Below are positions 3,534-37,424 of a stretch of 64,000 nucleotides of DNA, piece after piece. Where the stretch lies: positions 1 through 64,000 of the IMG/VR virus record IMGVR_UViG_3300008110_010000; one strand, given 5' to 3'. Position 1 is the first letter of the stretch; each line of letters begins with the position of its first letter. A program made the translations under genes and the position numbers. The notes beneath the pieces were generated by a model. That model was given only the letters and a program-made list of their open reading frames with translations. It searched no databases and had not been told where the DNA came from.

Positions 3534-4109
3534 TTAAATCAGGGATTGGCCTTCTGTATAATATTTTGAACCTATTGGGAATTCAACTTCACTGTTCAAT
3601 TTAAAAGTGTTTTTAACGAAATTTATACCATTGCTGAAATATAAATTTTCATAGGAAATCGATGGAATTTTTTTTAGATCAATCCAATTTTTGAATTCCT
3701 CTTTATTATTTTTCAGTGATGTTCCATAGTAAGATATTATTTCTTCCTCAGTAATGATCTTTTTTACCATATCTCCATTGTATCTGTGATGCCATAAATT
3801 TGTTTTTTCTGCAAACAGGTATGATCTAGATTGTTCGTACCAATTTTCTCTATATAAACACATCACCACGTCGCTTATATCCAGAAGTGTTGAAAAATCT
3901 ACATTATTTCTCCATAATTCCTTAATGAAATAGCTTTTATTCGGATCGATCCATGACGTATCCTTATAATTTACATCCTTCGTGAAATCATTATTGTCGG
4001 GATTATACGGCTCGTGGGCAATTATAAATTTATTTTTTAATGATAATCTAAACCACTCTGTTAGTGTTTGTCCCCCGGATCTACCCTCGGCAATTACAGT
4101 TAAAACCAT
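3534..4109 (-). CDS. Sulfotransferase-like P-loop protein
   Basis: N-terminal AEGRSGGQTL (PAPS-binding-like), HEPYN, SYENL. Confidence 0.55.
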   Translation of the reverse strand: MVLTVIAEGRSGGQTLTEWFRLSLKNKFIIAHEPYNPDNNDFTKDVNYKDTSWIDPNKSYFIKELWRNNVDFSTLLDISDVVMCLYRENWYEQSRSYLFAEKTNLWHHRYNGDMVKKIITEEEIISYYGTSLKNNKEEFKNWIDLKKIPSISYENLYFSNGINFVKNTFKLNSEVEFPIGSKYYTEGQSLI

Positions 4110-4120
4110 ATCAGAATATT

Positions 4121-4573
4121 TTAATTAGAAACACTAAAGTTATTTGATGTGAAAATTCTTTGCGCATGTGTATTCCAATCCTCACATTCACATTTTATTG
4201 ACGAATAGGACCCTAACATCTGAGAGCATGTCTCGTTGACAAACCAGATCGGAGCTAATTTTGGTCTTTTGATCCTGTTAGTAACATACAGGTTATACAG
4301 AAATGCGATTTCATTATCAAGTTTATTAAACCAAACATAGCCCAGCGGAGATTTGTTTGAAAATAAAATAAAAAGTGTATGACCCTCTTTTAGTCTATTA
4401 AAAACGTCTTCTAATTTGAACATCTTATCCCACGAGTATTCCTGTTTAAAATAGTTGATTAGAATCTCCATATGATTTATATGAATGTCTTCAATTTGAT
4501 TTTCGATTCTTACCACACCCAATTTTTTTTGATCTATAAAATCTTCCCTGTTTATATTAAAGTTAATCATCAT
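4121..4573 (-). CDS. GNAT-family acetyltransferase
   Basis: PLGYVWF..AFLYNLYV..R and WNTHAQRIF..NNF match the GNAT motif pattern. Confidence 0.55.
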   Translation of the reverse strand: MMINFNINREDFIDQKKLGVVRIENQIEDIHINHMEILINYFKQEYSWDKMFKLEDVFNRLKEGHTLFILFSNKSPLGYVWFNKLDNEIAFLYNLYVTNRIKRPKLAPIWFVNETCSQMLGSYSSIKCECEDWNTHAQRIFTSNNFSVSN

Positions 4574-5640
4574 ATTAGTTTTCTTTCTTTGTTTATAAAT
4601 TCTTGCATATTATGCCAAACATCGTCTTTTAAACCAATTTTATTTAATTCATTAATAAAATCTTGATGATCCGGATGATCCTTGTCCCAAATTTTATGTA
4701 GTTGAAATTCAGTATCACTAAATGTTCCCCAATTTGTAATTTTTCCAAAAAATACATTTAATTTATTTCCAAAGATGGAGTGCATCAAATCATAGAATTT
4801 CTTCATTTCTTTATAGTTTGATGTTTGCACTACAAACGAGGTTTTTACAGATTTTAATGTTGGTATAGTAGATATGAATTTTAAATTATCAATTAATTCT
4901 TCCCAATTACCTCCCACCCTTACCTTGTTTTCGTAAGTATCTTTAGTAGCCGCATCTATGCTGATTTCACACGTTTTTACATATTTGTGAACTTTTTTCA
5001 TAGAGTTCCACATTTTTTCATTCCATTTTGTTGCATTTGTATGTAAATGGATTCGTTCTAAATTTGACCATTTTGACTTATCAAAGTTTCTTAAAAAATC
5101 TCTAAATCCAACAGAAACAAATGGATCACCACTACCAGTTATATACAGCGTTTTTGTTGTTTTACCGTATTCATTTTCAATATCCTCAATCGTTTTTTTA
5201 ATCCTTTGTATTCCATCGGCACTTTCCACAATTAAATCAACCCTACAAGATGGACATTTAAGATTGCACGTTCTATCAAATGAAAATTGAATTATTGTTG
5301 GGGGTTCAGTGATCCCGTTATTAAATAAATCAATTCTTTCTTTTAATTTACTCGGCATCTCATTCTTATGATAAAGAGTATCAGTATTACCAATTTTTCC
5401 AAATGTTACTAATTGATGTAAAAACGGACACTGACCTTTATCACAATATTTATAAGAGCCATCTAAAACGGATTTTCTGATTTCTATAGCCTCTTCGGAT
5501 TCCCAGGAATTTTTTAATGTGGTGTTTTCTGGTAGATACTTTTTCAACCACGATGCACAACAAAGAAACCTATTTTTATGTTGTATTTCAAGTGACACAA
5601 ATGGAACAGCACACACATAATTTTTTAAATCGATACTCAT
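4570..5640 (-). CDS. Radical SAM protein with N-terminal SPASM/twitch-like Cys cluster
   Basis: CNLKCPSC (CxxxCxxC), GSGDPF, N-terminal CAVPF...LCCASW. Confidence 0.85.
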   Translation of the reverse strand: MSIDLKNYVCAVPFVSLEIQHKNRFLCCASWLKKYLPENTTLKNSWESEEAIEIRKSVLDGSYKYCDKGQCPFLHQLVTFGKIGNTDTLYHKNEMPSKLKERIDLFNNGITEPPTIIQFSFDRTCNLKCPSCRVDLIVESADGIQRIKKTIEDIENEYGKTTKTLYITGSGDPFVSVGFRDFLRNFDKSKWSNLERIHLHTNATKWNEKMWNSMKKVHKYVKTCEISIDAATKDTYENKVRVGGNWEELIDNLKFISTIPTLKSVKTSFVVQTSNYKEMKKFYDLMHSIFGNKLNVFFGKITNWGTFSDTEFQLHKIWDKDHPDHQDFINELNKIGLKDDVWHNMQEFINKERKLI

Positions 5641-6314
5641 TAAATTATATTTTTAATTTGTCTCTTGTTATTTAATATATCTATTAAAAATTCTGAAAAT
5701 TCATAGTGGGAGTCCTCGCACCAATGACCATCGTCTACCTCTCCATTGGTTTCTTGTTTTATGTTTCTATATTTTTTAGATAAAATAATCCCACATTTTG
5801 ACAGGTCTGAACACCATGACCAATGAATTATTTTATTTTTAAGAGAAAAATTAATCAATTTCATCCAGTTACATATTTCTAGTACGTAAGGGAAATTCGA
5901 TCTATTAATTAGTAATTCTTGTATTGTTTTTTCCGAGATAAACTCAAATGTCTCAATTTTTTTATGTGCAAAAAATCCGTTTTCGTTACCTGGTTCAGGA
6001 TTGAAATGTCCCCACTGATCTGACTTATTTACTAATCTAAACCTACTTTGATTAGTCCAACCAAAAATTAAAATATCCCCTTCCTTAATTTTATCAACAA
6101 CTTTACAAAACTCCTCTAAAATATGCGAGTTATCAACACCTCCCAGTCCTAAATTTATTAAATTTAAACCAAGTTTCTCAGCAATAATCTCACCATAAAC
6201 TTTCGGGACATATCCCTTATATTCAATGTATTTTTGTCTCCAGTGTATTGTTGATCTTTCCGGGGGGTAAAAATAATCGGTAAACGAATCCCCAAAGGTC
6301 CACAGATTATTCAT
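5640..6314 (-). CDS. SGNH/GDSL hydrolase-like protein
   Basis: LWTFGDSF, NLGLGGVDN, C-terminal DGH. Confidence 0.65.
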   Translation of the reverse strand: MNNLWTFGDSFTDYFYPPERSTIHWRQKYIEYKGYVPKVYGEIIAEKLGLNLINLGLGGVDNSHILEEFCKVVDKIKEGDILIFGWTNQSRFRLVNKSDQWGHFNPEPGNENGFFAHKKIETFEFISEKTIQELLINRSNFPYVLEICNWMKLINFSLKNKIIHWSWCSDLSKCGIILSKKYRNIKQETNGEVDDGHWCEDSHYEFSEFLIDILNNKRQIKNII

Positions 6315-6856
6315 CAGATCATTGTTTTATTTTTTTCTTGTCTTGTTGTTAATTTAATTGTTACATCGGATATCTCGATAGTATGATCTAGCTCTATAAT
6401 AAAGTTTAAAATTTTAAACAAATCCTCGAATTTGAGTTTATTAAAATTCGCACCAAACATTTTATTATTCTCCATTGTACTTGGGTTAAAATTAATAACT
6501 CTAACTTTTTTATACGGATTGGCAATATTTAATGTCTGTGATAAATTTATTAGGTGTTTTTTATTTGAGACATATAGAGGACTAAAACATCCGTCCTCGT
6601 GTACTGCGGACGTTCCAAAATTTATTATTGTTTTTTCTAAATCCTTCCATTTTTCGAATAGTTCAAAAAAAACCAAGGATTGCTTCACATCTTTACTATA
6701 TGCATGATTTAAAAATACATCGCATGAAGCTACCTGCGATAATATAGTGTCAATTTCTTCTCTTAGATCTATTTTAATTATATCGTGGGTCTTTCCCCAC
6801 ATAAGCGAAGCGTAATTGCCAAAACCGTCTGAAGTACCTGATATTGCTATTTTCAT
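6314..6856 (-). CDS. Short-chain dehydrogenase/reductase-like protein
   Basis: MKIAISGTSDGFG Rossmann start, FLNHA, YVSNKK. Confidence 0.6.
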   Translation of the reverse strand: MKIAISGTSDGFGNYASLMWGKTHDIIKIDLREEIDTILSQVASCDVFLNHAYSKDVKQSLVFFELFEKWKDLEKTIINFGTSAVHEDGCFSPLYVSNKKHLINLSQTLNIANPYKKVRVINFNPSTMENNKMFGANFNKLKFEDLFKILNFIIELDHTIEISDVTIKLTTRQEKNKTMI

Positions 6857-7356
6857 ATTAATTTCGAATTTCCTATTTGTAAATCATTCTTATTTAAAAA
6901 TAATATAAGGGACCATCTCTCACCTCCTAATATTTTTTTCACTTCATGGTCCCTATCACTTTTCATTGTATAAATTGTCCCAGTAACTTTAGGAAGTATT
7001 TCTAAAGGATTATATGCAATGAATTCTCCACCATCATAACTTTCATTTAAACAAACACCTATATTTAAAATTTGATCAGGATGCGTTGTCGAATCATTAT
7101 GTTTAGCAAATTCATTACCAGCCAAATAACGATGCAAATATATTTCTTGCATTTCATTTATTTTATTTTTTGAATATTCATCTAAAAGAAATTCTTTCAG
7201 TCGATCAAATATCCACTGGGTGTTACTATTTCTAAGTACAACATGATAATAGTAATTAAAATCATTTCTTTTAAATAATGATGATGAGTGTTTAGGTTTA
7301 AAAGTATTTGATAGATTAATTATCTTATTACATTCTTCTATTGAAAATGAAATCAT
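6853..7356 (-). CDS. 2OG-Fe(II) oxygenase
   Basis: HND...YDGGEF...HEVKKILGGERWSL. Confidence 0.85.
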   Translation of the reverse strand: MISFSIEECNKIINLSNTFKPKHSSSLFKRNDFNYYYHVVLRNSNTQWIFDRLKEFLLDEYSKNKINEMQEIYLHRYLAGNEFAKHNDSTTHPDQILNIGVCLNESYDGGEFIAYNPLEILPKVTGTIYTMKSDRDHEVKKILGGERWSLILFLNKNDLQIGNSKLI

Positions 7357-7844
7357 ATTAATTTTTTTTTATTCATTATGTCGGTTCTTAATCGTTCAGA
7401 ACTATTCTCGTCAAATAGATCTTCATAATATTGAATTGGTATTTTTAATTTATCAGACAATTCCTGTAAATCTTGACCCATTTTTATTAAAAGTTCTCTT
7501 GATTTATCAATCGTTTCTACTGGTGGTGCGACATATTCATATGGGGTTCCGGAATGATACCCATTTCGAATATTGTGATAAAGGTAAGAGTATGATTCGA
7601 GATGATTTTTAAAATTTTTTCGATTTAATAATATCACATCATCAAATTTTTTTGATAATTCAAAATTATTCTCGTGCTGATGTATTATTGTTTTAACAAC
7701 AACGTTATTCATATCATCGTCATATAAAAAACGATCACTACCGTCAAACGGCTCAAAGATTGCTCTAAATTCTCTTTCTTTCGAAATTTTATGTAATAAA
7801 GATGTAGATCCCGTTCTGGGTAATGATATTATTAAAATTCTCAT
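7353..7844 (-). CDS. Sulfotransferase-like protein
   Basis: ISLPRTGSTSL, FEPF, YYEDLF. Confidence 0.65.
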   Translation of the reverse strand: MRILIISLPRTGSTSLLHKISKEREFRAIFEPFDGSDRFLYDDDMNNVVVKTIIHQHENNFELSKKFDDVILLNRKNFKNHLESYSYLYHNIRNGYHSGTPYEYVAPPVETIDKSRELLIKMGQDLQELSDKLKIPIQYYEDLFDENSSERLRTDIMNKKKLI

Positions 7845-8383
7845 ATTAATCTTTTATTGTCATATAATTTAAGATATTTAAAATCTGTATTAGTCATCCA
7901 AACATTTAAAGCGCATCTAACCCCAGTCGTGACAGGCATAACCCCATGGTATATTTTACTTCCATCAAAAGATATGGACTGTCCTATTTTTAACAAATGT
8001 TTTTGTGAATCGTTTATGTTTTTTGATTTTGATAATATAAATCTCCCATCTTCAAAATTTTCGCTTAAAACTATTACTGTAGTTAGCTGTGAGGTTGAAT
8101 CCAAGTGTAAATCTAATCTTCTACTATCGTAATATTTGGTAATACTTATATTAAAATCTTCAATTTTAAAATCTTTAAAATTAAACCACAATTTAAATTT
8201 TTCTTCTTCAAAATTTTTTATGAACCTGTCAAATATCAATTTATTAAATCCTAAATCGGAAATTCTTTTACAATCCCAAACCTCGGATGGATTATAATTA
8301 AATTTTTTACCCACCCTATCTGCATATTCAATAATTGAATTACATTCCTCACCTCCAAAGAAATTGTTTATCGAATAGTTCAT
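7841..8383 (-). CDS. 2OG-Fe(II) oxygenase
   Basis: HLD...FEDGRF...HGVMPVTTGVR. Confidence 0.85.
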   Translation of the reverse strand: MNYSINNFFGGEECNSIIEYADRVGKKFNYNPSEVWDCKRISDLGFNKLIFDRFIKNFEEEKFKLWFNFKDFKIEDFNISITKYYDSRRLDLHLDSTSQLTTVIVLSENFEDGRFILSKSKNINDSQKHLLKIGQSISFDGSKIYHGVMPVTTGVRCALNVWMTNTDFKYLKLYDNKRLI

Positions 8384-9015
8384 AATATTTTTTTATCCTT
8401 TATATCCTCCACAAATTCTACAACGGGTTCTTCTATTTCTAATAATCCATGAATTATTTTATACATTTCGTAACATCCTTTAGGTCCTGGATGAAAATCT
8501 ATTTTTTCTCCAACTCCTTCTTCCCAATTGGAAGTTACCTTAATAAGTGTTACAAAGTCAGAGGTAGGAATGGCGAATTGTTCACTCCATGTAATAAACA
8601 CTGGATTATATATTTTTAACCATTTTTGGAGATTTTTTAAAAATTTAATGTCATTTTCCCTAACACCGTTTATCCAATTATTACCTTCAGTGAGTCTTAA
8701 ATCATCTAATTTTTCGGCAAATTTACTATCCTTATAATATTGTGGCGATCTGTACTGGTTATTTAAATATAGTTCTTTTTTATCCCCATAATACCTTCCG
8801 GGTAACCTTCCAGGGTCAGTAAATACAATAACAATTCTATCTCCCTCCATATATTCATCTAAATTACCTAATTGAAAAATTATTGAGGAGTTATCAGCCC
8901 CAAGTTTACCATGTTTATAAACTTCGTAGTGTTTTGATAAATAATATCTCCAATGGTATTTTGGTATGTGCCAATCAACAAAAGAATCCCCAAAGCAAAA
9001 TAATCTCGGTTTCAT
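8380..9015 (-). CDS. SGNH hydrolase-like protein
   Basis: FCFGDSF, GKLGADN, DFHPGPKG. Confidence 0.65.
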   Translation of the reverse strand: MKPRLFCFGDSFVDWHIPKYHWRYYLSKHYEVYKHGKLGADNSSIIFQLGNLDEYMEGDRIVIVFTDPGRLPGRYYGDKKELYLNNQYRSPQYYKDSKFAEKLDDLRLTEGNNWINGVRENDIKFLKNLQKWLKIYNPVFITWSEQFAIPTSDFVTLIKVTSNWEEGVGEKIDFHPGPKGCYEMYKIIHGLLEIEEPVVEFVEDIKDKKIL

Positions 9016-9518
9016 TAAATTAAAGACGTTCTTTTTTTATTAAACATTATAACTAAAACCCTCCTTTGTCCAGATTCTAACTGTGTAACTTGGTGAACCT
9101 GGTTGTTTCCCTCGAAATTAACATACTGTCCAATTTCTGTAAAATTTACATCCTCTCCATCAATTATTAATCTTCCTCCCACAAATTCATTCGATAACAA
9201 AATTAACGTGGTCTGTAAAACAAAATACTTATCTCTGTGAGGTTTTGTTAAGTTTCCTTTATCATATATTAATTCATAGAAAAAATCTATTTCATATTCA
9301 GGTTTGCCAAATTTTTCAACAATAAATGAATTAAACTTGCTATCGTGCATCCCATAATATTTCATTGATGTCAGGATTAGTGCATCCTCGCCTTTGATAA
9401 CTATATAGGGATGCTTATATTTTAAATTTTCATATTCTAAAGGATTCATTCCCCCATTTTCCGAAAGTGCTTGATTGATGTAATCGATCTCTTCGCTATT
9501 TAAACAACCAATATCCAT
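9015..9518 (-). CDS. 2OG-Fe(II) oxygenase
   Basis: HRD...FVGGRL...HQVTQLESGQRR. Confidence 0.8.
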   Translation of the reverse strand: MDIGCLNSEEIDYINQALSENGGMNPLEYENLKYKHPYIVIKGEDALILTSMKYYGMHDSKFNSFIVEKFGKPEYEIDFFYELIYDKGNLTKPHRDKYFVLQTTLILLSNEFVGGRLIIDGEDVNFTEIGQYVNFEGNNQVHQVTQLESGQRRVLVIMFNKKRTSLI

Positions 9519-9520
9519 AG

Positions 9521-10339
9521 TTATATCAAGATGTTAATTTTTCCTTTAGTCTTTTCCGATATGATTTTATTTTCTCCAATAAAACGGTATATTTCATCGG
9601 AAATTAGTTCATATCCAAGCTTATTTGGATGTACACCAACAAGGTTAATTGGGTTTTTAAAATTCTCCCAAATACTTTTTTTATCAAAACTGGTTAAAAA
9701 GTCCCTAAATGTTTCTTTGCGGAATCCCCAATAGTGCCTAGTGTCGATCAAATCGGTTTTATCAATTTCCCCTATAATATTTTTTGGCAACATCATATCG
9801 AATCCATCGCAAAACAAATATCTAATACCCAAATTTTTAAACATATATTGCAAATACAATAAATAACCCTGGTTGACTATGTTATAATAATTTTCGTTGT
9901 ATAAATTAACCGTGTACCATTCCTTATAGTCGATTTTTAATTTATTATAAATTTTATTTTCCCCATTTGAGCTCAGTATATGATCGTATATGTATTTTTT
10001 GTCTAGATGTCTTTTACTCCATGAATGCCATTCATTATCTGGCGGAAAAAATGGCAATTCTTCCCTTAAGGGGGAAGACCACATTATAATCACTAGATCA
10101 TTCTCTTTAATCCTACCAGTATCTATACATTTACAAACGCAATTAAATATGAATCGATTATCTGATCCACCTACTCCGTAATTTTGGAGGTCTATTTTTA
10201 ATTTTTCTGCTAATTGTTTTGGCCAAGAATATTTGCTCCGAATTTTTGTTTTTTCCTCTAAACTACTTACCGCATTCTCTTCTGCTAAATCTCCACCAAC
10301 ACCCTCCGTCCAGCTATCCCCGAATGTATATAATTTCAT
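9521..10339 (-). CDS. SGNH hydrolase-like protein
   Basis: LYTFGDSWTEG, NYGVGGSDN, GVHPNKLGY. Confidence 0.7.
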   Translation of the reverse strand: MKLYTFGDSWTEGVGGDLAEENAVSSLEEKTKIRSKYSWPKQLAEKLKIDLQNYGVGGSDNRFIFNCVCKCIDTGRIKENDLVIIMWSSPLREELPFFPPDNEWHSWSKRHLDKKYIYDHILSSNGENKIYNKLKIDYKEWYTVNLYNENYYNIVNQGYLLYLQYMFKNLGIRYLFCDGFDMMLPKNIIGEIDKTDLIDTRHYWGFRKETFRDFLTSFDKKSIWENFKNPINLVGVHPNKLGYELISDEIYRFIGENKIISEKTKGKINILI

Positions 10340-11426: not shown

Positions 11427-11429
11427 TAT

Positions 11430-16070: not shown

Positions 16071-16076
16071 TAATAT

Positions 16077-16505: not shown

Positions 16506-16518
16506 AGTAAAGTAATAT

Positions 16519-17015: not shown

Positions 17016-17127
17016 AGCGTTAGTTCTTTTAATATGTATTCTGATAATATAATATGGAATATCTCACCATAATGAAGATCTTCAACTTTTCCTTGGTGTC
17101 TCCAAAGACCCAAAGATTATTGGACAT
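17012..17127 (-). pseudogene. Internally deleted SGNH-family gene remnant
   Basis: MSNNLWVFGD in one frame joined out of frame to GKVEDLHYGEIFHIILSEYILKELTL*; both ends overlap the flanking genes. Confidence 0.7.
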
Positions 17128-29460: not shown

Positions 29461-29461
29461 G

Positions 29462-31494: not shown

Positions 31495-32801
31495 TATAGT
31501 AATCTTTTTTTAATTATCGGATTGAGACTCTCCAAACAAATTAGATCGTTTGGTAAATTTCTGTGTTTTGAATTATTTGCAATCATTAAATCGTGTCTTT
31601 CTTTATGATTTACCCATGGATTATCTCCAAATAATCTTATATGTTCATTTATACTCGATATAAATATCTTCGATTCAAAGTCGTCGTTATCTAAAATAAA
31701 CTCTGGAAGATGATACGAATTAACAAACGGAACAATGTAATCATAATTTCTCCTGAGAATTGATTCAAAGCTATTTTTTATATTCGCTCCGTCAAGTAAT
31801 ATACATCCATTCTTGACGTAGAATATTATATTCTTTTTACTATCCTTTAAAATATTTAAAATTATTTGGGATTCTAAATCTTCCGATGATGTGTCCAAGA
31901 AAACATATTCATATTCAAAATGATCAGTAATCATGCTTCTGAGCGTCTCCTTGCTGTTTTTTTCGATCACAAAATATCTAAGATTTTTAAATTTATTTTT
32001 ATAAAAGTTTAGGGTAGTTTCCAAAACCCCTCCATAATTTTCTTCAGTTCCATCTACCGAAACAAAAGCACAGACCTCAGTAGAGATGCACGGTATGTCT
32101 TCATATGGTGGATAATGATTGTCTCTAAAATTTACTAGCTGTTTATAAAGAGAATTTGATATGGTTGAAGGAAATTCGCAGTTTGATAACGCAAGGCCAA
32201 AAACAGCTCCCTCTCCTCTTAAATCATCATCAGCCTCCTTCGCTACCTTTTTTCTAAGCATCGAATAAAATTCATAGGTTTCAAACAATTTGTCTATCTT
32301 TTCTTCGTCAATACCCTCGAAATTAAAATACATTAAATCTTCCCATGGAGTAACTGTATTTCTAAATTCAACATTATTTTTTATCAGCTCATCTTTAAAT
32401 TTTCCAAGTTTTGGATTCGTTTCTAATAAGGCTTTGAAATGTATGCTTGTAAATCTGTTGTATGAAAATCCTGGATTAAAATTCTTAGAAATAATATCAT
32501 TTATGAATTCTTCAGAATTTATCAATATCAGATCAGAATCCATATAAAGTATTTTATTATACCCCCTTTTTCTTACCTGGTTAATGAATATAAATTTGCT
32601 ATGAAAATCAAAGGTTGTGGAAAAATCGTGCTTTATTATTTCAACCCCTTCCATGTCTTTGAATTCTGACACATTATCGGTGTAAACAAATATTTTAAAA
32701 GATCCACTATCAGTGAAATTCTTTATTAAAAATTTGCAGCAGGTATAATAATACTCAGTATTAGAAGCAATTGTCGCTATTGCTATTTTATTTTCCATCA
32801 T
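31494..32801 (-). CDS. Putative glycosyltransferase-like protein
   Basis: YTDN, LYMDSD (DxD) in the N-half; GT2-like C-half. Confidence 0.5.
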   Translation of the reverse strand: MMENKIAIATIASNTEYYYTCCKFLIKNFTDSGSFKIFVYTDNVSEFKDMEGVEIIKHDFSTTFDFHSKFIFINQVRKRGYNKILYMDSDLILINSEEFINDIISKNFNPGFSYNRFTSIHFKALLETNPKLGKFKDELIKNNVEFRNTVTPWEDLMYFNFEGIDEEKIDKLFETYEFYSMLRKKVAKEADDDLRGEGAVFGLALSNCEFPSTISNSLYKQLVNFRDNHYPPYEDIPCISTEVCAFVSVDGTEENYGGVLETTLNFYKNKFKNLRYFVIEKNSKETLRSMITDHFEYEYVFLDTSSEDLESQIILNILKDSKKNIIFYVKNGCILLDGANIKNSFESILRRNYDYIVPFVNSYHLPEFILDNDDFESKIFISSINEHIRLFGDNPWVNHKERHDLMIANNSKHRNLPNDLICLESLNPIIKKRLL

Positions 32802-34244
32802 TTATGCTTTGCAATTAATCAGAAGGGTATTGTTGAATACCTCTTTAGTAGAGACTAACTCGTACTTCATACTGTTGAATCCCTCACTTTTATAGTTTAT
32901 ACATTTCCTTTGCATTTCAGTTACGAACCTTTTTTCATTTCTTGCTGTTGTTTCCCCCTTTGCCCACTTATTATTTACTAGCCCTTCGTCAATGTGTGGT
33001 AAACACTCGAAAGATCCTTCTCTCCTATAAGGAATTGGCATGTCGCTAACCTCGATGGAATCTTCAACGATTTCTAAATTATAAGCCTTAGCTTTAATTC
33101 CACTCATTACGTCTTCGATTTCTCCATTTTCTATCAAATCAAATTTAAAATGCAGAACTGGCTTATGTTTTAAATCGTGAAATTTAGTAACATCTCCTGG
33201 AATTTTTACTGCCTTATCAAAAATCATTAATTCTGCAATTTCACCTCTAAAAAATAATGGATTTTCCTCGTCGCCGTTATATCCCACGATAGATTTTTCT
33301 TTATCCCTATACTGAAATAAATCATTATTTATTATTGTAGATTTATTTTCTTTGATTCCTTTTTCGTTAGATCTTGCTAGTTCGTCATTTAGAAAAAAAT
33401 TAAAGTGACCACTTGAAGAATCATAAGATGTTGTTACCCAGGACCAAACACCATCATCCCTCTTGATCCAATTATAGATCTGGGATGATGAAAAATCTGA
33501 AATCATGCTAGTAACAGCTCTGGAGTTGTTAAAAGATATGCAGTACGGACTATATGATTGCTTTCGGAAAACCGGAAATTCTATGAATTTTTTGTCATCC
33601 GTTCCTATTAGCCAATCTTTATATTTTTCAGGTTGTTGTTCTGCTTTAAATAAAGCACATACCGTATGATCTGATCCCAGTATTTTGTTTATGGATTTTA
33701 TCCATGGGATTTCAACATATGAGTTGTCTCCATTAAATCTTGAAAATTTTCTTTTTTTATATTTTTTATAAATCCTTTTTTCAACATATCCTTCGAAATA
33801 ACATCGATAAAAAAGGTCGTCATCTTCCATACCCCAATCCCAATAATCATTAGAATATCCGTTAGTTTTTATAACTTGATCCTTAGTAAATAGAATTACC
33901 CCACCGAAGTATTGTTCATAATTTAGTTTGAAATCGTACTTCGAAAGTTTTGTTGCTATATGAATTGGATATTTTTCCGGATATGAATAGTCACAATCAT
34001 CGGAGAATGGCACCATATCAACGTCATGCCATGCAATATAATCACATCCATCATCGAAGGCAAACTTGGCTGCTATGTTTTTCATTAGTCCCCTATTAAA
34101 CAGCTTATTATCCACCTGATGGGCCACATAAAATTTATGATCTATTCCACGATTTTTTAGATACTCCCCCAGGTCTTCAGTTAGCTTCTGTAAGTGATCG
34201 AATCTATTTCTGTAAGGTATGCAAATTCCCAGTTTATGACTCAT
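32802..34244 (-). CDS. GT7 galactosyltransferase-like protein with inserted LamG domain
   Basis: IPYRNR, FNRG, WHDVD, YFGG, NGYSNDYWDWGMEDDDL; LamG-like FRGEIAELMIFD inserted before the C-terminal segment. Confidence 0.8.
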   Translation of the reverse strand: MSHKLGICIPYRNRFDHLQKLTEDLGEYLKNRGIDHKFYVAHQVDNKLFNRGLMKNIAAKFAFDDGCDYIAWHDVDMVPFSDDCDYSYPEKYPIHIATKLSKYDFKLNYEQYFGGVILFTKDQVIKTNGYSNDYWDWGMEDDDLFYRCYFEGYVEKRIYKKYKKRKFSRFNGDNSYVEIPWIKSINKILGSDHTVCALFKAEQQPEKYKDWLIGTDDKKFIEFPVFRKQSYSPYCISFNNSRAVTSMISDFSSSQIYNWIKRDDGVWSWVTTSYDSSSGHFNFFLNDELARSNEKGIKENKSTIINNDLFQYRDKEKSIVGYNGDEENPLFFRGEIAELMIFDKAVKIPGDVTKFHDLKHKPVLHFKFDLIENGEIEDVMSGIKAKAYNLEIVEDSIEVSDMPIPYRREGSFECLPHIDEGLVNNKWAKGETTARNEKRFVTEMQRKCINYKSEGFNSMKYELVSTKEVFNNTLLINCKA

Positions 34245-35647
34245 ATTCCTACGTTAATTTCTGTTATATTTCCCTCTCTTTTTCTTCCGTGATCTGTGTA
34301 CTTTAGATCCGATAATCCGTCTCCAAATAAAAGATTGCTGTTATTTCTTACCTCGTTATAGAATCTTAATTGATTCCATCTAGTTGCTTTATCCTTCCAT
34401 CTATTTTCGAAGAAACCATTTTGCTCATGTTTCATGGATTTAAAGATAGAATCCCTTCTGATCGGAAGGTCTATTTTTTTAAACCAAGGACCTTCCATAT
34501 CAACAATTTCACATTTGAAAATACTAGCATCGTTTCCGTTTCCTGAAAGATCTACTAACTTATAATTTTCTATGTGCTCTGCATCATAGTGACAAAGAAT
34601 GGATCCGGATTTTTTATATTCCGAAAAGTCGTTTGTTGCTGAAACAGATTTAACTTCATTTTCACTTAAAATTCCTTCTAAGACTACCAAAGAATCTATG
34701 TACCCCTTGAAAAAATTAGGATCTCCATTTCTTTTAGGATTTCCTGCACCGATAAAGAAATACTTTTCGTCTGAATAATCCTTTAATTCTCCCTCCCAAT
34801 TTGTTTTTCCTATATGTTCTCCGTCTTGATAGAAATTTATTTCTCTCAACGATTGATTTAATGTGATACAAATATTTGTTTGATAATTAGTAGTTATTTC
34901 TGTGTTTATGTATGATGCTTTTTCTTCGGAGTTGAATGTAACAAAATTGTATCTCTTGAATGAATTATAGGAAATTGCAGTGTCATACCCCGGAATGCTA
35001 AAAACCGTATAAACATCAAGATCCTTCGTTGAATCATAAACCAATTCATCGGGGAAAAAAGATGCAAATAATGTTAGATCCTTGTCTATGCAAAAATTAT
35101 TTTTTGCTCTCACAAAAGAATCCTGTCCGTTAAATTTTAGTGATTTATGGAAATTTCTTGTTTTTTTGATGTAATAAGGCTCTGTGCCTATGCTCTTGTT
35201 TTTGCATCTTAGGAAAAGGTCATCATCTTCAAATCCCCATCCCCAATACTTATTTGAATATCCGTTTATCTTTTTGAAATCTTTAATCGGAAACATAGTG
35301 ACCCCGCCGAAGTATTCGTCGAATGGCTTTGATCTTTCCCCCGAGTCCTCGTCCTCTATTAGAGTTGCAAGATGAACTGGATGATCACAGTAAGAATAAT
35401 CAACATCCAATGGCAGCAAATCAACATCATGAAAAACCACATAATCACATCTTAAGTTTCTGGCACACTTAAATCCTATATTTAATAGCATCCCTCGATT
35501 AAATTGCTTACCGTCGTCTTGATTTACGATGATAATTTCATGTGGTATTTTTTCCTCGTTTAGATATTTTACTATCTCCTTGAGAAAAAAATAAAGATGT
35601 TCCCCTCTGTGGCGGAAAGGAACTATGACTCCTAGTTTTTTATCCAT
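34241..35647 (-). CDS. GT7 galactosyltransferase-like protein with inserted LamG domain
   Basis: VPFRHR, FNRG, FHDVD, YFGG, WGWGFEDDDL; FKGYIDSL...DLSGNGNDA. Confidence 0.8.
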   Translation of the reverse strand: MDKKLGVIVPFRHRGEHLYFFLKEIVKYLNEEKIPHEIIIVNQDDGKQFNRGMLLNIGFKCARNLRCDYVVFHDVDLLPLDVDYSYCDHPVHLATLIEDEDSGERSKPFDEYFGGVTMFPIKDFKKINGYSNKYWGWGFEDDDLFLRCKNKSIGTEPYYIKKTRNFHKSLKFNGQDSFVRAKNNFCIDKDLTLFASFFPDELVYDSTKDLDVYTVFSIPGYDTAISYNSFKRYNFVTFNSEEKASYINTEITTNYQTNICITLNQSLREINFYQDGEHIGKTNWEGELKDYSDEKYFFIGAGNPKRNGDPNFFKGYIDSLVVLEGILSENEVKSVSATNDFSEYKKSGSILCHYDAEHIENYKLVDLSGNGNDASIFKCEIVDMEGPWFKKIDLPIRRDSIFKSMKHEQNGFFENRWKDKATRWNQLRFYNEVRNNSNLLFGDGLSDLKYTDHGRKREGNITEINVGI

Positions 35648-35849
35648 CTATTGTAGGGTCCTTTGGTTTTATCGATTTATGAAATTCCGTCAGATAGTAC
35701 TGAATCCTGTTGCTCCAATCATCCTTATCAATATCTTCTATCCAAGCTGAAATGTCATCGAGGGAATCTGAGATTCTTTCGAGTGCTTTTACTTTTCTAA
35801 GTTCCAATTCTAAAAATTGATCCTCGTTTGATTTTTTAGCTGTTGCCAT
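35640..35849 (-). CDS. Hypothetical protein
   Basis: 69 aa ORF in line with the cluster. Confidence 0.55.
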   Translation of the reverse strand: MATAKKSNEDQFLELELRKVKALERISDSLDDISAWIEDIDKDDWSNRIQYYLTEFHKSIKPKDPTIDG

Positions 35850-35850
35850 A

Positions 35851-36699
35851 TTAGATTGATATTATTTTTTTAATTAAAGAGCTCCATTCTTTATAATCTT
35901 CAAAATAGACGCATCCATATTCAAACATAAAATCAGAATTACTGAGGTCTATCCTAGATTTATTTCTCTTTATAGCATCATACATCACTTTATATTCGTC
36001 AGAATATGAATAATCCTGATTAATATCTGCGACATTTTTGATCCTTTCTAAGCATGTTGAATCCCATTTAAAATGGTGGACCTGGACGGAATATTTTTCT
36101 ACTGGTGCAATTAGTGGATGGCTCCATCCTTGCCACCTCCAGGTAGTCTGCCCATTTATTTTTGCATAATGCTGCCCAGAAGTTATTTCAATTCCTCCTT
36201 TAACCAAGCAGATTTTGTTAGGGCATGCGTTACTCATGGGGTATCTGAAAAATCCGGCTATGGGAAACTGGTCAAAGATTGGTACATCTTCAAGTATCTT
36301 ACAGAACTCCCCGTTGTTTCCTATCCTGTCTAGAAATCCTCCCCTAATTAATTCCCACCCCTGACTTTCACAATCACTAACCATATAATTAGGTGACTCA
36401 GGATAAACGTGAAATTCGTCTATATCAGCAATCATGTACCAGTTGCTTCTTGATTTTTTTATTTGTTCATTATATAGATCAGTAACCCTGTTCCAATCAA
36501 AGATCCTATCATAAACAGTTTTAACTATTTTTACTTTTTCCTTACCTCTGATGGAACTTCTTACCTCTCTCTTTAAATCTGGATGCAGATCAGATTCATA
36601 GACCACAAAATTTATTTCATCTACCATGTTATAATAATGATTGATGAAGTGTGGTATTAGAGGAACCCCATGACCTATTATAGATATTAATTTTATCAA
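35851..36699 (-). CDS. Putative glycosyltransferase (GT2/GT92-like)
   Basis: FINHY, ADIDEF, GQH, HHFKW. Confidence 0.6.
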   Translation of the reverse strand: MIKLISIIGHGVPLIPHFINHYYNMVDEINFVVYESDLHPDLKREVRSSIRGKEKVKIVKTVYDRIFDWNRVTDLYNEQIKKSRSNWYMIADIDEFHVYPESPNYMVSDCESQGWELIRGGFLDRIGNNGEFCKILEDVPIFDQFPIAGFFRYPMSNACPNKICLVKGGIEITSGQHYAKINGQTTWRWQGWSHPLIAPVEKYSVQVHHFKWDSTCLERIKNVADINQDYSYSDEYKVMYDAIKRNKSRIDLSNSDFMFEYGCVYFEDYKEWSSLIKKIISI

Positions 36700-37424
36700 A
36701 TCTCTTTTCTTTTAAATAGGGTTATTCCTGATGACGAAGGTTTATCTTTTAATGATCCGTAATTAAATAGACTGAATTTTTCCCATTCAGAGTCGTCAAA
36801 ATCTTTTACAAATTGGGATGGACCAGAGAAATCGTGGAAATCTTTTTTCTGATCTTCAGATACTATGAAGCTGGAAGAAAATTTAGGATCTGTGTCATGT
36901 ATTGCTATGATGCCCTGATCGTTCAAAATGTTTTTGTATAACTTAAAATCCTTGTCTACTCCTTCATATGAATGATCTCCATCTATAAAAAGAAAGTCTA
37001 TTTTAATATCTTGTAAAACGAAAAAATCATAATATGCTCTTTCTGAAGTTTCTTTAACAAATCTTGGATGGAATGTTTTTCTGTAAAAACTTTCTTCATC
37101 ACACATATTAGATTGTCCCCCTACACCATTACACGGATCTACCACATAAGTTGCTCCGATATTCCCCCAATTATAATCGGGATTTCCCGAGAAAGTTCCT
37201 ATTGAATGCAGATCTATTCGGGCTTGTGTTAGAATTCGCGGAATATATCCGCCTCCACTTCCTATGCAAACACAATTTTTAAATCTGAAAAATTGCACTA
37301 GAGAATAGATCAGAAGTCCATCCCCCATATCCAGATCAGTCGCTCCGTGGGAGTATCTGAACGGGACAGGATTGTCCAAATCGTTGGTTATTCTTTGTTT
37401 TATGTAATCAGTATTCAGAATCAT
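36696..37424 (-). CDS. Class I SAM-dependent methyltransferase
   Basis: VCIGSGGG, IDFLFIDGDHSYEG, IAIHD. Confidence 0.8.
   Translation of the reverse strand: MILNTDYIKQRITNDLDNPVPFRYSHGATDLDMGDGLLIYSLVQFFRFKNCVCIGSGGGYIPRILTQARIDLHSIGTFSGNPDYNWGNIGATYVVDPCNGVGGQSNMCDEESFYRKTFHPRFVKETSERAYYDFFVLQDIKIDFLFIDGDHSYEGVDKDFKLYKNILNDQGIIAIHDTDPKFSSSFIVSEDQKKDFHDFSGPSQFVKDFDDSEWEKFSLFNYGSLKDKPSSSGITLFKRKEI

What the first reader, a model, noticed from the sequence alone, without database searches (positions are those of the whole stretch)
3534..37424. 34-kb co-oriented tailoring-enzyme island
Seen: about 45 coupled minus-strand genes, including 6-7 2OG-Fe(II) oxygenases, 5 radical SAM proteins, 6 SGNH-like proteins, 2 sulfotransferase-like proteins, 2 SET proteins, GNAT, SDR, a methyltransferase and several GTs. 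No scaffold synthase (NRPS/PKS) and no DNA-modification nucleotide enzymes are evident. Inference: a pathway for elaborate modification of virion proteins or glycans (hydroxylation, glycosylation, acylation, sulfation, methylation), or of the host surface.
Basis: partly seen in the sequence, partly recalled or inferred. Interest (0 to 1): 0.7.

Follow-up and report, generated by a model that had tools for sequence, protein, structure and literature searches.

The report
Phage glycan-building and tailoring gene island
A large freshwater phage carries a 34-kb one-direction block of soluble sugar-building and sugar- or protein-tailoring enzymes; its core six-gene cassette recurs in about 95 other uncultured phage sequences and probably coats a phage part, perhaps the tail fibres, with an elaborate glycan, although the target is not proven.

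Summary
Window 3534-37424 is one block of 41 minus-strand, tightly coupled genes in a 219-kb jumbo myovirus that is otherwise almost all plus-strand.

The block is not one uniform pathway. It has three layers:
- A conserved core at 30112-37424: Methyltransf_24, a GT92/GT2-like transferase, a 69-aa virus-only protein, two beta4GalT-like GT7 enzymes with an inserted LamG domain, and an N-twitch radical SAM. It is collinear in about 95 of 116 related viral loci.
- A precursor-activation module at 15.5-21.4 kb, shared with Bdellovibrionales clusters that also hold N-twitch radical SAM arrays.
- A lineage-specific array of small paralogous tailoring enzymes at 3.5-13.4 kb.

The theme continues outside the reported coordinates. 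Plus-strand genes at 42.2-50 kb match a bacterial cassette that in one contig lies in a flagellar locus. They end just before a Ser/Thr-rich collagen-like tail fibre gene.

No membrane, flippase or polymerase genes were found. The best reading is cytoplasmic glycan assembly and tailoring, most likely on virion proteins. The acceptor is unproven, and four complete relatives lack collagen-like fibres.

The parts
36696..37424 (-). First gene of the block: class I SAM methyltransferase (Methyltransf_24). It is part of the conserved core.
   Evidence: Pfam 45.1 bits against a cut-off of 26.3. Homologues lie in 95 related loci, always directly upstream of the GT-A gene.
35851..36699 (-). GT-A glycosyltransferase, GT2_4/GT92-like. 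It served as the core anchor gene.
   Evidence: The Pfam Glyco_tranf_2_4 hit is weak (E 1e-4). Atlas neighbours are GT92/GT2 families. Present in 99 of 116 loci.
35640..35849 (-). sm69: a 69-aa acidic protein of a virus-only family with no annotation. It has a conserved roughly 45-residue core with invariant E24, W36, W45, R48, Y52 and L53, and variable tails.
   Evidence: Alignments. The Atlas search gives a viral-only cluster of 906 members. No Pfam hit. Present in 91 loci, sometimes as two tandem copies.
32802..35647 (-). Two paralogous beta-1,4-galactosyltransferase-like GT7 enzymes (34241-35647 and 32802-34244). Each has a LamG/pentraxin-like domain inserted inside the catalytic domain.
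31494..32801 (-). 435-aa protein of unknown function. It is an insertion into the core found only in this phage and near-identical contigs.
   Evidence: No Pfam hit. Homologues in only 5 loci, four of them at 99-100% identity.
24503..31494 (-). Radical SAM array. It holds four N-twitch radical SAM paralogues (30112-31494, 27901-29460, 25654-26991, 24503-25672), interleaved with a LamG-only protein (29462-30115) and a DUF6071/SGNH-like protein (26988-27908).
   Evidence: NF033640 scores of 307-331 bits against a cut-off of 170. Invariant Cys at 21/40/82/85 and at 136/140/143. The AF2 model has pLDDT 95. The nearest PDB structures (SkfB, CteB, anSME, SuiB, viperin) match only weakly. The LamG-only protein occurs in 87 loci.
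21360..24525 (-). DUF7796 double-domain protein (22744-24525; Atlas neighbours include WavE/capsule-biosynthesis families), an SGNH-like protein (22088-22747) and a 243-aa unknown (21360-22091).
   Evidence: Pfam DUF7796 at E 1e-5, below cut-off. Atlas neighbours are DUF7796, WavE and capsular polysaccharide biosynthesis families. SGNH paralogy.
15521..21376 (-). Precursor-activation module. It holds a cupin + NTP-transferase + APH-type kinase fusion (19445-21376), an SGNH-like protein (18697-19482), a shikimate-DH-N protein (18069-18725), a GatZ/KbaZ-like protein (17117-18076), a HAD-like protein (16668-17015), an APS-kinase-like P-loop protein (16077-16505), an NMNAT-like nucleotidyltransferase (15699-16070) and DUF2061 (15521-15730).
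   Evidence: Pfam and NCBIfam results. The nearest PDB match for the NTP-transferase is LicC (E 3e-6). The trio CupNTK / ShikDH / GatZ-like is conserved next to N-twitch radical SAMs in a Bdellovibrionales chromosome (29-33% identity) and in viral locus L086.
13606..15480 (-). 624-aa protein with a C-terminal Hint (intein-like) domain. It is the only island gene preceded by the phage's recurrent GATATATAA promoter-like motif.
   Evidence: Pfam hits to AXH, Intein_splicing and PT-HINT at residues 463-621. The N-terminal 460 aa have no hit. The motif lies at 15548, 68 nt upstream.
3534..13441 (-). Lineage-specific array of small tailoring enzymes:
- two SET proteins (12968-13441, 12534-12968)
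- 2OG oxygenases (6853, 7841, 9015, 10336, 10935, perhaps 11936)
- SGNH-like proteins (5640, 8380, 9521)
- a distant radical SAM (4570-5640)
- weak calls for GNAT (4121), SDR (6314) and sulfotransferase-like proteins (3534, 7353)
   Evidence: Pfam results. Paralogy. Motifs read. There are few homologues in related loci. The stretch is present unchanged in independent lake metagenomes.
42200..49980 (+). A second glycan cassette, outside the reported finding. It holds Methyltransf_24 (42200-42832), GT8 (44077-44850), a short DegT aminotransferase (44866-45513), a GT2::radical SAM fusion (45510-47693), a GFO/IDH/MocA oxidoreductase (47720-48820) and an ATP-grasp protein (48805-49980).
   Evidence: Pfam results. 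The fusion architecture is conserved in more than 100 protein clusters. Bacterial contigs carry these families around the fusion: ATP-grasp + GFO/IDH/MocA + DegT in three of the five contigs read (L173, L175, L176), Methyltransf_24 as well in two (L173, L175); L174 and L177 have no ATP-grasp hit. In L173 the set lies between fliS and fleQ, beside a TPR-GT41 protein. Identities are 37-42%.
51147..55778 (+). 1543-aa collagen-like tail fibre. It has 816 residues of G-X-Y repeats with X = Thr/Ser and Y = Ser, and a C-terminal Peptidase_S74 chaperone domain. It is the candidate acceptor in this phage.
   Evidence: PHROG tail fibre families. Repeat composition. Peptidase_S74 at 63.7 bits. The promoter-like motif lies 74 nt upstream.

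Best explanation
The block is a phage-encoded, cytoplasmic system for building and tailoring a glycan. It was assembled from modules of different ages.

Shown:
- A conserved core encodes a methyltransferase, three GT-A glycosyltransferases (one GT92/GT2-like, and two beta4GalT-like enzymes with an inserted LamG lectin-type domain), a small virus-only protein, and one or more N-twitch radical SAM enzymes.
- A second module encodes a kinase + nucleotidyltransferase fusion and accessory enzymes of the kind that activate a sugar or polyol phosphate.
- A third layer is a locally duplicated set of 2OG oxygenases, SGNH hydrolases or acyltransferases, SET methyltransferases and other small enzymes.
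- All products are predicted soluble.

Inferred:
- During infection the phage makes its own activated precursors.
- It assembles an oligosaccharide of at least three sugars.
- It edits that oligosaccharide by methylation, O-acyl handling and radical C-H chemistry, and possibly by sulfation and hydroxylation.
- It attaches the product in the cytoplasm to a phage structural protein, most plausibly tail fibres. This would resemble bacterial flagellin glycosylation, which takes place before export.
- In this phage the Ser/Thr-rich collagen-like fibres are the obvious candidate acceptors. The SET and P4H-like enzymes may act on the protein itself.
For: Conserved collinear core:
- The order MT24, GT-A, sm69, GT7, GT7, radical SAM recurs in about 95-99 of 116 viral loci at 40-60% identity.
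- In relatives the neighbours are NAD-epimerase/dehydratase (59 loci), dTDP-sugar 3,5-epimerase (43), a TPP enzyme (45) and UDP-Glc/GDP-Man dehydrogenase (14).

GT7 enzymes:
- They are genuine beta4GalT relatives with intact DVD and WGxEDDD motifs.
- A LamG domain is inserted between the WGxEDDD motif and the C-terminal part of the catalytic domain, the region that, from prior knowledge of beta4GalT1, helps form the acceptor site.

Link between glycosyl transfer and radical SAM chemistry:
- A GT2::radical SAM fusion sits in the adjacent plus-strand cassette, and the fusion is widely conserved.
- In bacteria the fusion is flanked by GFO/IDH/MocA and DegT in all five contigs read, by ATP-grasp in three and by Methyltransf_24 in two. 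In one contig the set lies between fliD-fliS and fleQ beside a TPR-GT41 protein, which is the position of a flagellin glycosylation island.

No lipid-carrier machinery:
- No island protein has a transmembrane segment.
- No polytopic membrane protein exists in the 219-kb record.

Protein-directed families are present: two SET proteins and P4H-type 2OG oxygenases.

Position next to fibres:
- A fibre ending in a Peptidase_S74 domain lies 2.5-6 kb upstream on the same strand in 32 of 95 related loci.
- In this phage the fibre gene follows the plus-strand cassette.
- In the isolated phage RsoM2USA the radical SAM homologue sits at the edge of the structural module confirmed by mass spectrometry.

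The second module co-occurs with N-twitch radical SAMs, GDSL and GNAT genes in a Bdellovibrionales chromosome.
Against: - No acceptor was identified and no expression data exist. No RNA run was listed.
- Four complete cassette-carrying phages have no collagen-like stretch at all. Collagen-like fibres therefore cannot be the general acceptor of the core.
- No dedicated protein glycosyltransferase of the GT41 or Maf type is present.
- Tail-fibre neighbourhoods are known hot spots for accessory genes, so adjacency is weak evidence (PMC7029224).
- The island's 5' end lacks the promoter-like motif that precedes fibre and other structural genes.
- The left 10 kb has almost no conserved synteny. It may be functionally unrelated to the core.
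- The complex prediction of sm69 with GT7b and the radical SAM gave no answer.
- The record is only 79% complete, so missing membrane components cannot be excluded.
Confidence: 0.45

Rival explanations
1. Host-surface remodelling. The enzymes alter the host's O-antigen, capsule or other envelope glycans during infection, using the host's own lipid-carrier, flippase and ligase machinery. The effect would be to block superinfection by competing phages or to prevent progeny from re-adsorbing to lysing cells.
For: - This is the interpretation given for glycosyltransferase-rich host-recognition clusters of pelagimyophages (PMC7029224).
- Atlas neighbours of the DUF7796 protein include WavE/capsule-biosynthesis families.
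- Relatives carry classic O-antigen-type nucleotide-sugar genes such as an RmlC-like epimerase, an epimerase/dehydratase and UDP-Glc dehydrogenase.
- In Bdellovibrionales the shared module sits with GT4 genes.
Against: - There is no initiating phosphoglycosyl transferase, flippase, polymerase, ligase or any polytopic membrane protein in the island or in the 219-kb record.
- SET and P4H-like enzymes do not fit a glycan-only target.
- From general knowledge, newly made surface glycan does not replace existing receptors quickly in a lytic cycle.
Confidence: 0.25
2. No single pathway. The block is a hypervariable accessory region where independent enzyme cassettes accumulate and duplicate. Only the conserved core works as a unit. 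The small 2OG, SGNH, SET and other enzymes act on unrelated host or phage targets.
For: - The left 3.5-17 kb has few or no homologues in 116 related loci.
- Its families expanded by local duplication.
- Gene content downstream of the core differs widely between relatives.
- Multiple 2OG oxygenases and radical SAM cassettes are a common, unexplained feature of marine T4-like phages (PMC7029224, PMC5332604).
Against: - Tight translational coupling in one orientation across the whole 34 kb.
- The combination of N-twitch radical SAM, GDSL, GNAT and the CupNTK trio recurs in a Bdellovibrionales chromosome.
- The array is maintained without change in independent lake populations.
Confidence: 0.17
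3. Peptide or protein maturation of the RiPP kind. The SPASM/twitch-type radical SAM enzymes cross-link or otherwise modify a small precursor, with sm69 as the candidate. The product is then glycosylated and methylated.
For: - The nearest solved structures to the radical SAM are the peptide- or protein-modifying enzymes SkfB, CteB, anSME and SuiB.
- sm69 is small, sometimes occurs in tandem copies, and has a conserved N-terminal region with variable tails.
- A weak PqqD hit beside a 61-aa ORF lies near the Bdellovibrionales cluster.
Against: - The structural matches are weak (E 5e-5, TM 0.35-0.41) and include the sugar and nucleotide enzymes AprD4, BlsE and viperin.
- The variable tails of sm69 are charged low-complexity stretches without Cys or other typical target residues.
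- There is no protease or exporter.
- The GT2::radical SAM fusion ties this kind of radical SAM to glycosyl transfer.
- The complex prediction gave no support.
Confidence: 0.08
4. DNA hypermodification. The oxygenases, glycosyltransferases and other enzymes decorate phage DNA bases to evade restriction.
For: Phage 2OG (TET/JBP-type) oxygenases and glycosyltransferases are known to hypermodify DNA. This is cited in PMC12619734 and also rests on general knowledge.
Against: - The island 2OG enzymes match the P4H-type family 2OG-FeII_Oxy_3, and no Tet_JBP hit was reported.
- No nucleotide kinase, hydroxymethylase or DNA-binding family was found in the island.
- A LamG-bearing GT7, SGNH and SET enzymes have no precedent on DNA.
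Confidence: 0.05

Closest known systems
Host-recognition cluster (hypervariable tail-fibre region) of pelagimyophages and T4-like cyanophages (Zaragoza-Solas et al. 2020, PMC7029224)
   Same: A large variable region combines tail fibre genes with many glycosyltransferases, LPS-type sugar genes and radical SAM cassettes. Cassettes are gained and lost between close relatives.
   Different: - This phage is a jumbo myovirus. Its sheath is nearest to huge phages and a Flavobacterium phage, and is not shown to be T4-like.
- The paper does not describe the conserved six-gene core, the GT7-LamG enzymes or the N-twitch radical SAM family.
- The paper favours host O-antigen as the target.
Bacterial flagellin O-glycosylation islands
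   Same: - Soluble cytoplasmic enzymes make and transfer modified sugars onto Ser/Thr of a surface filament protein without lipid carriers.
- The window's plus-strand cassette (ATP-grasp, GT2::radical SAM, Methyltransf_24, GFO/IDH/MocA, DegT) matches, at 28-42% identity, a cassette that in one bacterial contig lies between fliS and fleQ.
   Different: - The phage has no flagellin and no TPR-GT41 or Maf-type protein transferase.
- Only one of five bacterial contexts examined was flagellar.
- The similarity concerns the plus-strand cassette, not the reported minus-strand island.
Virion glycosylation in mycobacteriophages (Freeman et al. 2023, cited in PMC12619734), chloroviruses and mimivirus
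   Same: Virus-encoded glycosyltransferases act in the cytoplasm on structural proteins. Collagen-like proteins are modified by viral hydroxylase/glycosyltransferase enzymes in mimivirus (prior knowledge).
   Different: - Those systems use a few transferases.
- Here there are more than 40 genes, including radical SAM arrays, animal-type GT7 enzymes with a LamG insertion, SGNH and SET enzymes.
- No glycosylated protein has been demonstrated here.
Animal beta-1,4-galactosyltransferases (GT7: beta4GalT1, beta4GalT7)
   Different: - There is no membrane anchor.
- A LamG domain of about 225 residues is inserted within the catalytic domain.
- Donor and acceptor are unknown.
Moraphages, a lineage of large aquatic Bacteroidota phages with four core glycosyltransferase orthogroups (PMC12619734)
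   Same: Aquatic jumbo phages of 200-300 kb that carry several conserved glycosyltransferases. The probable Bacteroidota host would fit the sheath relatives and the low G+C content of this phage.
   Different: Membership was not tested because no sequences were available to compare. The paper does not mention radical SAM or collagen-like fibres.

Membership tests
GT7 beta-1,4-galactosyltransferase family | Sequence match to both Glyco_transf_7N and Glyco_transf_7C above the curated cut-offs | tested here: met
   58-72 bits against cut-offs of 23-27 for both genes. PDB beta4GalT7/T1 at E 1e-30.
GT7 beta-1,4-galactosyltransferase family | GT-A fold with the metal-binding DxD (DVD) motif and the WGxEDDD catalytic motif | tested here: met
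GT7 beta-1,4-galactosyltransferase family | Transfer of Gal or GalNAc from a UDP-sugar in beta-1,4 linkage | not testable with these tools
   Requires an enzyme assay.
N-twitch radical SAM (NCBIfam NF033640) | Score above the curated cut-off of 170 bits | tested here: met
   314.9, 306.6, 313.2 and 331.1 bits for 24503, 25654, 27901 and 30112. Not met by 4570-5640 (73.3 bits).
N-twitch radical SAM (NCBIfam NF033640) | CxxxCxxC radical SAM cluster motif plus an N-terminal Cys set for an auxiliary cluster | tested here: met
   C136, C140, C143 and C21, C40, C82, C85 are invariant in 52 sequences. The GGEP motif is also invariant.
Lipid-carrier-dependent O-antigen or capsule gene cluster | Initiating phosphoglycosyl transferase, a flippase or ABC exporter, and a polymerase or ligase, all of which are polytopic membrane proteins | tested here: not met
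   No such Pfam family was hit in any island ORF. No island protein has a hydrophobic segment at the 1.6 threshold used; at 1.5 only the 69-aa DUF2061 protein has one. The maximum in the whole record is four. The record is 79% complete.
Flagellin-glycosylation-type cassette (DegT, GFO/IDH/MocA, ATP-grasp, GT2::radical SAM, Methyltransf_24) | Presence of the five gene families together | tested here: met
   All five lie at 42200-49980. Identities to the bacterial counterparts are 28-42%. This applies to the plus-strand cassette, not to the reported island.
Flagellin-glycosylation-type cassette (DegT, GFO/IDH/MocA, ATP-grasp, GT2::radical SAM, Methyltransf_24) | A dedicated protein O-glycosyltransferase (TPR-GT41 or Maf) and a filament protein substrate nearby | tested here: inconclusive
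   No GT41 or MptE-like match in the genome. A Ser/Thr-rich fibre gene lies directly downstream.
RiPP biosynthetic gene cluster | A precursor peptide with a conserved leader and a variable core carrying target residues, plus a recognition element, protease or exporter | tested here: not met
   sm69 has a conserved helical core, and its variable tails are charged and lack Cys. No protease, exporter or PqqD-like family was found in the island. The complex prediction gave no answer.
TET/JBP-type DNA base hypermodification system | A TET/JBP-family 2OG oxygenase together with nucleotide- or DNA-directed enzymes | tested here: not met
   The 2OG hits are to 2OG-FeII_Oxy_3, with none to Tet_JBP. No nucleotide-metabolism families were found in the island.
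SET-domain protein lysine methyltransferases | SET domain above the Pfam cut-off | tested here: met
   33.1 and 31.8 bits against a cut-off of 22.4. The second protein matches only the C-terminal third of the profile.
Sulfation pathway (sulfotransferases plus PAPS supply) | Sulfotransferase family match and an APS kinase | tested here: inconclusive
   - 3534-4109 matches Stf0 at E 0.011, below cut-off. 7353-7844 has a motif only.
- 16077-16505 passes the APS_kinase cut-off (43.7 against 21.1 bits) but covers only profile positions 6-97 of 152.
- No island ORF matched an ATP sulfurylase family in the Pfam scans; the rest of the genome was not screened for it.

The most novel reading that the evidence does not exclude
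This would be the first phage system that coats a virion filament with a complex, radical-SAM-edited O-glycan resembling a proteoglycan. Animal-type beta4GalT-like transferases would use their inserted LamG domain to dock on a phage structural protein (here the Ser/Thr-Gly collagen-like fibres). Arrays of uncharacterised N-twitch radical SAM enzymes would carry out new C-H chemistry on the attached sugars. The variable enzyme array would diversify the coat between strains, giving a programmable glycan layer that tunes host recognition or shields the fibres.
Probability: 0.2. Interest if true: 0.85.

Novelty: new variant of a known kind. Interest (0 to 1): 0.62.

Why it matters
- Phage regions rich in glycosyltransferases and radical SAM genes are widespread in aquatic viromes. 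They have been noted but never explained.
- This work isolates a defined, conserved six-gene cassette. It contains two large protein families with no known function: GT7 with an inserted LamG domain (2081 clusters) and N-twitch radical SAM (531 viral stretches encoding a relative, plus arrays in Bdellovibrionota).
- The adjacent plus-strand cassette links this gene neighbourhood to one that in bacteria can sit in a flagellin glycosylation locus.
- This turns a vague "auxiliary LPS genes" label into a hypothesis that can be tested by heterologous expression.
- If the target is the virion, it would extend virion glycosylation from mycobacteriophages and giant viruses to abundant freshwater and marine phages. 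It would also point to new radical SAM carbohydrate chemistry.

Tried and rejected
- Megablast of the island against GenBank phages found no match. The right flank matched only through a tRNA.
- tblastn of the radical SAM against isolated phages found only Ralstonia phage RsoM2USA, where all neighbours are annotated as hypothetical and only the radical SAM is shared.
- Sigma-70 promoter and terminator scans gave counts equal to shuffled controls. The enriched GATATATAA motif does not precede the cassette in this phage or in relatives.
The single protein was used instead.
- Sequence search of the GT7b C-terminal 94 residues against PDB found nothing. Only the structural alignment showed that this part completes the GT-A domain.
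- The complex prediction of sm69 with GT7b and the radical SAM returned no answer.
- Literature searches for an N-terminal twitch radical SAM function, and for giant-virus analogues, returned nothing.
- The search for RNA runs listed none that hold the gene, so expression could not be tested.
- Homologues of the IMPDH-like gene carried no organism names, so host inference failed.
- I rejected the idea that the frequent C-terminal Leu/Ile-Ile of island proteins is a sorting signal. It follows from TTAATATGA-type stop/start overlaps.
- I rejected collagen-like fibres as the general acceptor of the core cassette, because four complete relatives have none.
- I rejected the PAP2-family gene as evidence for lipid-linked chemistry, because it has no hydrophobic segments.

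Full report
**1. What is there**

The window is the first 64 kb of a 219,355-bp IMG/VR viral record that CheckV estimates at 79% complete. Nearly all of its roughly 227 ORFs lie on the plus strand. The stretch 3534-37424 is the single large minus-strand block.

I count 41 ORFs of at least 60 aa in the block. The ORFs fill almost all of the 33,891 bases, with 13 four-base and 4 one-base start/stop overlaps.

The phage is a myovirus: sheath, portal-like and baseplate wedge genes were found. Its sheath is closest, at 31-39% identity, to uncultured huge phages, Flavobacterium phage MaF61 and the Lak phages. Near-identical sequence occurs in at least 20 lake or freshwater metagenomes dated 2017-2024.

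**2. Gene content**

Firm calls from Pfam, NCBIfam and PDB searches:
- Four N-twitch radical SAM proteins at 307-331 bits against a cut-off of 170, plus a distant fifth.
- Two GT7 beta4GalT-like enzymes.
- Methyltransf_24.
- Two SET proteins.
- Three 2OG-FeII_Oxy_3 proteins.
- DUF6071, Shikimate_dh_N, an APS-kinase-like P-loop protein, DUF2061 and a Hint-domain protein.
- A cupin + NTP-transferase + APH-kinase fusion. Its transferase domain is nearest to LicC.

Weaker calls:
- Three or four further 2OG candidates and five SGNH-like proteins rest on sub-threshold hits, BLAST paralogy or motifs read from the translations.
- The sulfotransferase-like pair, GNAT and SDR calls are weak.

No NRPS, PKS or nucleotide-modifying family appeared.

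**3. The block is composite**

I fetched 116 related viral loci using the radical SAM 30112-31494 and the GT7 34241-35647 as queries. I then mapped every window protein onto them and clustered all their ORFs.

*Core.* One collinear core stands out: Methyltransf_24, a GT-A transferase, a 69-aa protein (sm69), GT7, GT7, N-twitch radical SAM. Its members occur in 91-114 of the 116 loci, always on one strand and in fixed order, at 40-60% identity. A LamG-only protein follows in 87 loci.

*Neighbours in relatives.* Genes downstream of the core vary, but they are dominated by nucleotide-sugar enzymes:
- NAD-epimerase/dehydratase in 59 loci.
- dTDP-4-dehydrorhamnose 3,5-epimerase in 43 loci.
- An E1/TPP enzyme in 45 loci.
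- UDP-Glc/GDP-Man dehydrogenase in 14 loci.

*Left part of the island.* By contrast, genes from 3.5 to about 17 kb have few or no homologues in these loci. Their families (SGNH, 2OG) arose by local duplication. Even so, this stretch occurs as an unbroken piece with 0-1 differences in two independent lake metagenomes, and as a 1-4% diverged strain in a third. It is therefore a stable part of this phage population.

**4. The core enzymes**

*GT7b.* It matches beta4GalT7 and beta4GalT1 at E 1e-30 over residues 4-165. An alignment of 60 homologues keeps the DVD and WGxEDDD motifs and a C-terminal DGLxxLxY motif. The AlphaFold model is confident, at pLDDT 94.5.

*GT-A gene 35851-36699.* It is GT92/GT2-like by the Atlas search.

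*sm69.* It belongs to a virus-only family and has a conserved helical core.

*Radical SAM.* It has invariant Cys at positions 21, 40, 82 and 85 ahead of the CxxxCxxC motif. Its confident model (pLDDT 95) resembles solved enzymes only weakly. These include SkfB, CteB, anSME and SuiB, but also viperin, AprD4 and BlsE, at E 5e-5 or worse and TM 0.35-0.41. I found no paper on this family.

**5. Cellular relatives**

Close homologues of the radical SAM occur mainly in Bdellovibrionota chromosomes. They often form tandem arrays of up to eight paralogues.

In one Bdellovibrionales contig, three genes matching the Radical_SAM family lie with a 133-aa SPASM-domain ORF that is probably the split-off N-terminus of the last one. 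Beside them are homologues of the island's precursor trio: Shikimate_dh_N, the cupin/NTP-transferase/APH fusion, and a GatZ/KbaZ-like protein, at 29-33% identity. GDSL, GNAT and GT4 genes lie alongside. The association of N-twitch radical SAMs with this activation module and with SGNH and GNAT enzymes is therefore not peculiar to the phage. The GT7, GT-A, Methyltransf_24 and sm69 genes are absent from that contig.

**6. Beyond the reported coordinates**

Across the divergent junction, the plus strand carries these genes in order:
- Methyltransf_24 (42200)
- GT8 (44077)
- a short DegT aminotransferase (44866)
- a 727-aa GT2::radical SAM fusion (45510-47693)
- a GFO/IDH/MocA oxidoreductase (47720)
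- an ATP-grasp enzyme (48805)

The fibre gene follows at 51147. The fusion carries a CC...CxxC segment ahead of its CxxxCxxC motif. It is a distant relative of the N-twitch profile (E 1e-7). The fusion architecture is conserved in more than 100 protein clusters, including bacterial ones.

All five bacterial contigs that I read carry GFO/IDH/MocA and DegT genes around the fusion. Three also carry an ATP-grasp gene, and two of those a Methyltransf_24 gene. In one contig the set lies between flaG-fliD-fliS and fleQ beside a TPR-GT41 protein, which is the position of a flagellin glycosylation island. A second contig also has a TPR-GT41 gene nearby. Direct similarity to the window proteins is 37-42%, and 28% for the methyltransferase.

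This is the strongest pointer to a protein acceptor. It rests on one flagellar context out of five, and it concerns the plus-strand cassette rather than the reported island.

**7. Candidate acceptor**

The fibre 51147-55778 has 816 residues of G-X-Y repeats, with X mostly Thr or Ser, Y mostly Ser and almost no Pro. It has a C-terminal Peptidase_S74 chaperone domain. Two further fibres of this kind lie elsewhere in the genome. Three tRNA-Ser genes and a tRNA-Thr gene follow the fibre gene.

In 32 of 95 related loci, a gene ending in the same S74 domain lies 2.5-6 kb upstream of the core on the same strand.

Against this, four complete phages of 237-288 kb that carry the cassette have no run of ten G-X-Y triplets anywhere. 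This genome has 394 overlapping matches. Collagen-like fibres may be the acceptor here, but they cannot be what the core cassette generally serves.

**8. What is absent**

- No island protein has a predicted transmembrane segment at the 1.6 threshold; at 1.5 only the 69-aa DUF2061 protein shows one hydrophobic stretch.
- No protein in the whole record has more than four hydrophobic stretches.
- The PAP2-family gene at 50277-51029 also lacks hydrophobic segments.
- No GT41 or Maf-type transferase is present.

The system therefore lacks everything needed to start, flip, polymerise or ligate a lipid-linked glycan. It would have to borrow host machinery to reach the cell surface.

**9. Interpretation**

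The best-supported reading is a soluble, phage-encoded pathway that activates precursors, assembles an oligosaccharide with at least three GT-A enzymes, and tailors it. The most likely acceptor is a virion protein.

The glycan-building part is well supported. The acceptor is an inference from five observations: solubility, the LamG insertion, the protein-directed SET and P4H-like enzymes, adjacency to fibre genes, and the flagellar-locus parallel. I put the full statement at 0.45.

The rivals:
- Host-surface remodelling is the main rival (0.25). It is the published view for similar regions in pelagimyophages.
- The left-hand array may be an unrelated collection of accessory genes (0.17).
- A RiPP-like peptide pathway (0.08) and DNA modification (0.05) are poorly supported.

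Expression could not be examined. The complex prediction for sm69 gave no answer.

**10. Novelty**

Regions near tail fibres that are rich in glycosyltransferases and radical SAM genes have been reported in marine T4-like phages (PMC7029224, PMC5332604). Core glycosyltransferases have been reported in large aquatic Bacteroidota phages (PMC12619734).

I did not find descriptions of the following:
- the conserved six-gene cassette
- the GT7 enzymes with an inserted LamG domain
- the N-twitch radical SAM arrays and their link to the activation module
- the cassette shared with a flagellar glycosylation locus

I therefore rate this a new variant of a known kind, of moderate to high interest.

Noticed in passing
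window 41802-42184 and 43848-63972: A tmRNA gene and 14 tRNA genes. Three tRNA-Ser genes (tga, gga, gct) and a tRNA-Thr gene lie at 57087-58047, just downstream of the extremely Ser/Thr-rich fibre gene. This may supply its codon demand. The minus-strand ORFs 41936-42205 and 57560-57820 overlap these RNA genes and are probably spurious.
   Followed up: no
G000 genome-wide, e.g. window 853, 1153, 2451, 51073, 58080; G000 118356: The motif G(A/G)ATATATAA(A) is about 40-fold enriched in intergenic regions. It lies 13-90 nt upstream of about 25 genes, including both large collagen-like fibres. It is a likely phage promoter. In the island it precedes only the Hint-protein gene (15548) and is absent from the island's 5' end.
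   Followed up: partly
window 3534-37424, gene junctions: 19 of 40 island proteins end in [LI][LI], against 7 of 187 elsewhere. The cause is a recurrent AAAnnTTAATATGA or ATTTAATG stop/start overlap, not a protein signal. It suggests a shared re-initiation context for the coupled genes.
   Followed up: yes
window 13606-15480: A 624-aa protein with a C-terminal Hint/intein-like domain that ends in HN followed by a six-residue tail. Its N-terminal 460 residues match nothing. It is possibly self-cleaving. Homologous pieces lie just upstream of the core cassette in some relatives.
   Followed up: partly
L147 / L172 (Bdellovibrionales chromosome) and other Bdellovibrionota loci L130-L169: Tandem arrays of up to eight paralogous N-twitch radical SAM genes in predatory-bacterium genomes, without the GT7, GT-A or sm69 genes. 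Their function is unknown.
   Followed up: partly
window 37533-41751: Directly across the divergent junction lie a Metallophos phosphoesterase and a HAD_SAK_2 protein (an RNA-repair-like pair), an SPFH/Band 7 protein, and a 356-aa IMPDH/GMP-reductase-type enzyme of about 356 aa, too short to hold the CBS pair of canonical IMPDH (an inference from length and from prior knowledge). The last is about 70% identical to genes on other 229-289-kb phage-sized contigs.
   Followed up: partly
window 44866-45513: The DegT/DnrJ/EryC1 aminotransferase gene encodes only 215 aa and matches profile positions 24-98 of 360. Bacterial counterparts in the same cassette are 365-380 aa. It may be truncated or degenerate.
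   Followed up: no
window 50277-51029: A PAP2-superfamily phosphatase (28.2 bits against a cut-off of 27.2) with the PSGH and SR...H...D motifs but no hydrophobic segments. It lies between the ATP-grasp gene and the fibre gene.
   Followed up: partly
G000 110635-113994; G000 67825-71186 and 208080-211516: Two tandem portal-like paralogues at 48% identity. Separately, a three-gene module is present twice in the genome on opposite strands, at 25-30% identity.
   Followed up: no
window 2476-3498 and 58925-59863: Homologues of these three genes (two unknowns and a DUF6734 protein) sit between the S74 fibre gene and the core cassette in relatives, on the same strand. In this phage they are scattered to either side of the island, which implies an inversion or rearrangement of the island.
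   Followed up: partly
L127, L151 (contigs binned as Pelagibacter or Pelagibacterales MAGs): Short contigs in SAR11-type MAGs carry the radical SAM, and L151 carries the whole core cassette, at 51-59% identity. They are most likely phage contigs placed in the wrong bin, not bacterial loci.
   Followed up: no
window 62492-63286: A CHAP-domain protein, a likely cell-wall hydrolase or endolysin component.
   Followed up: no
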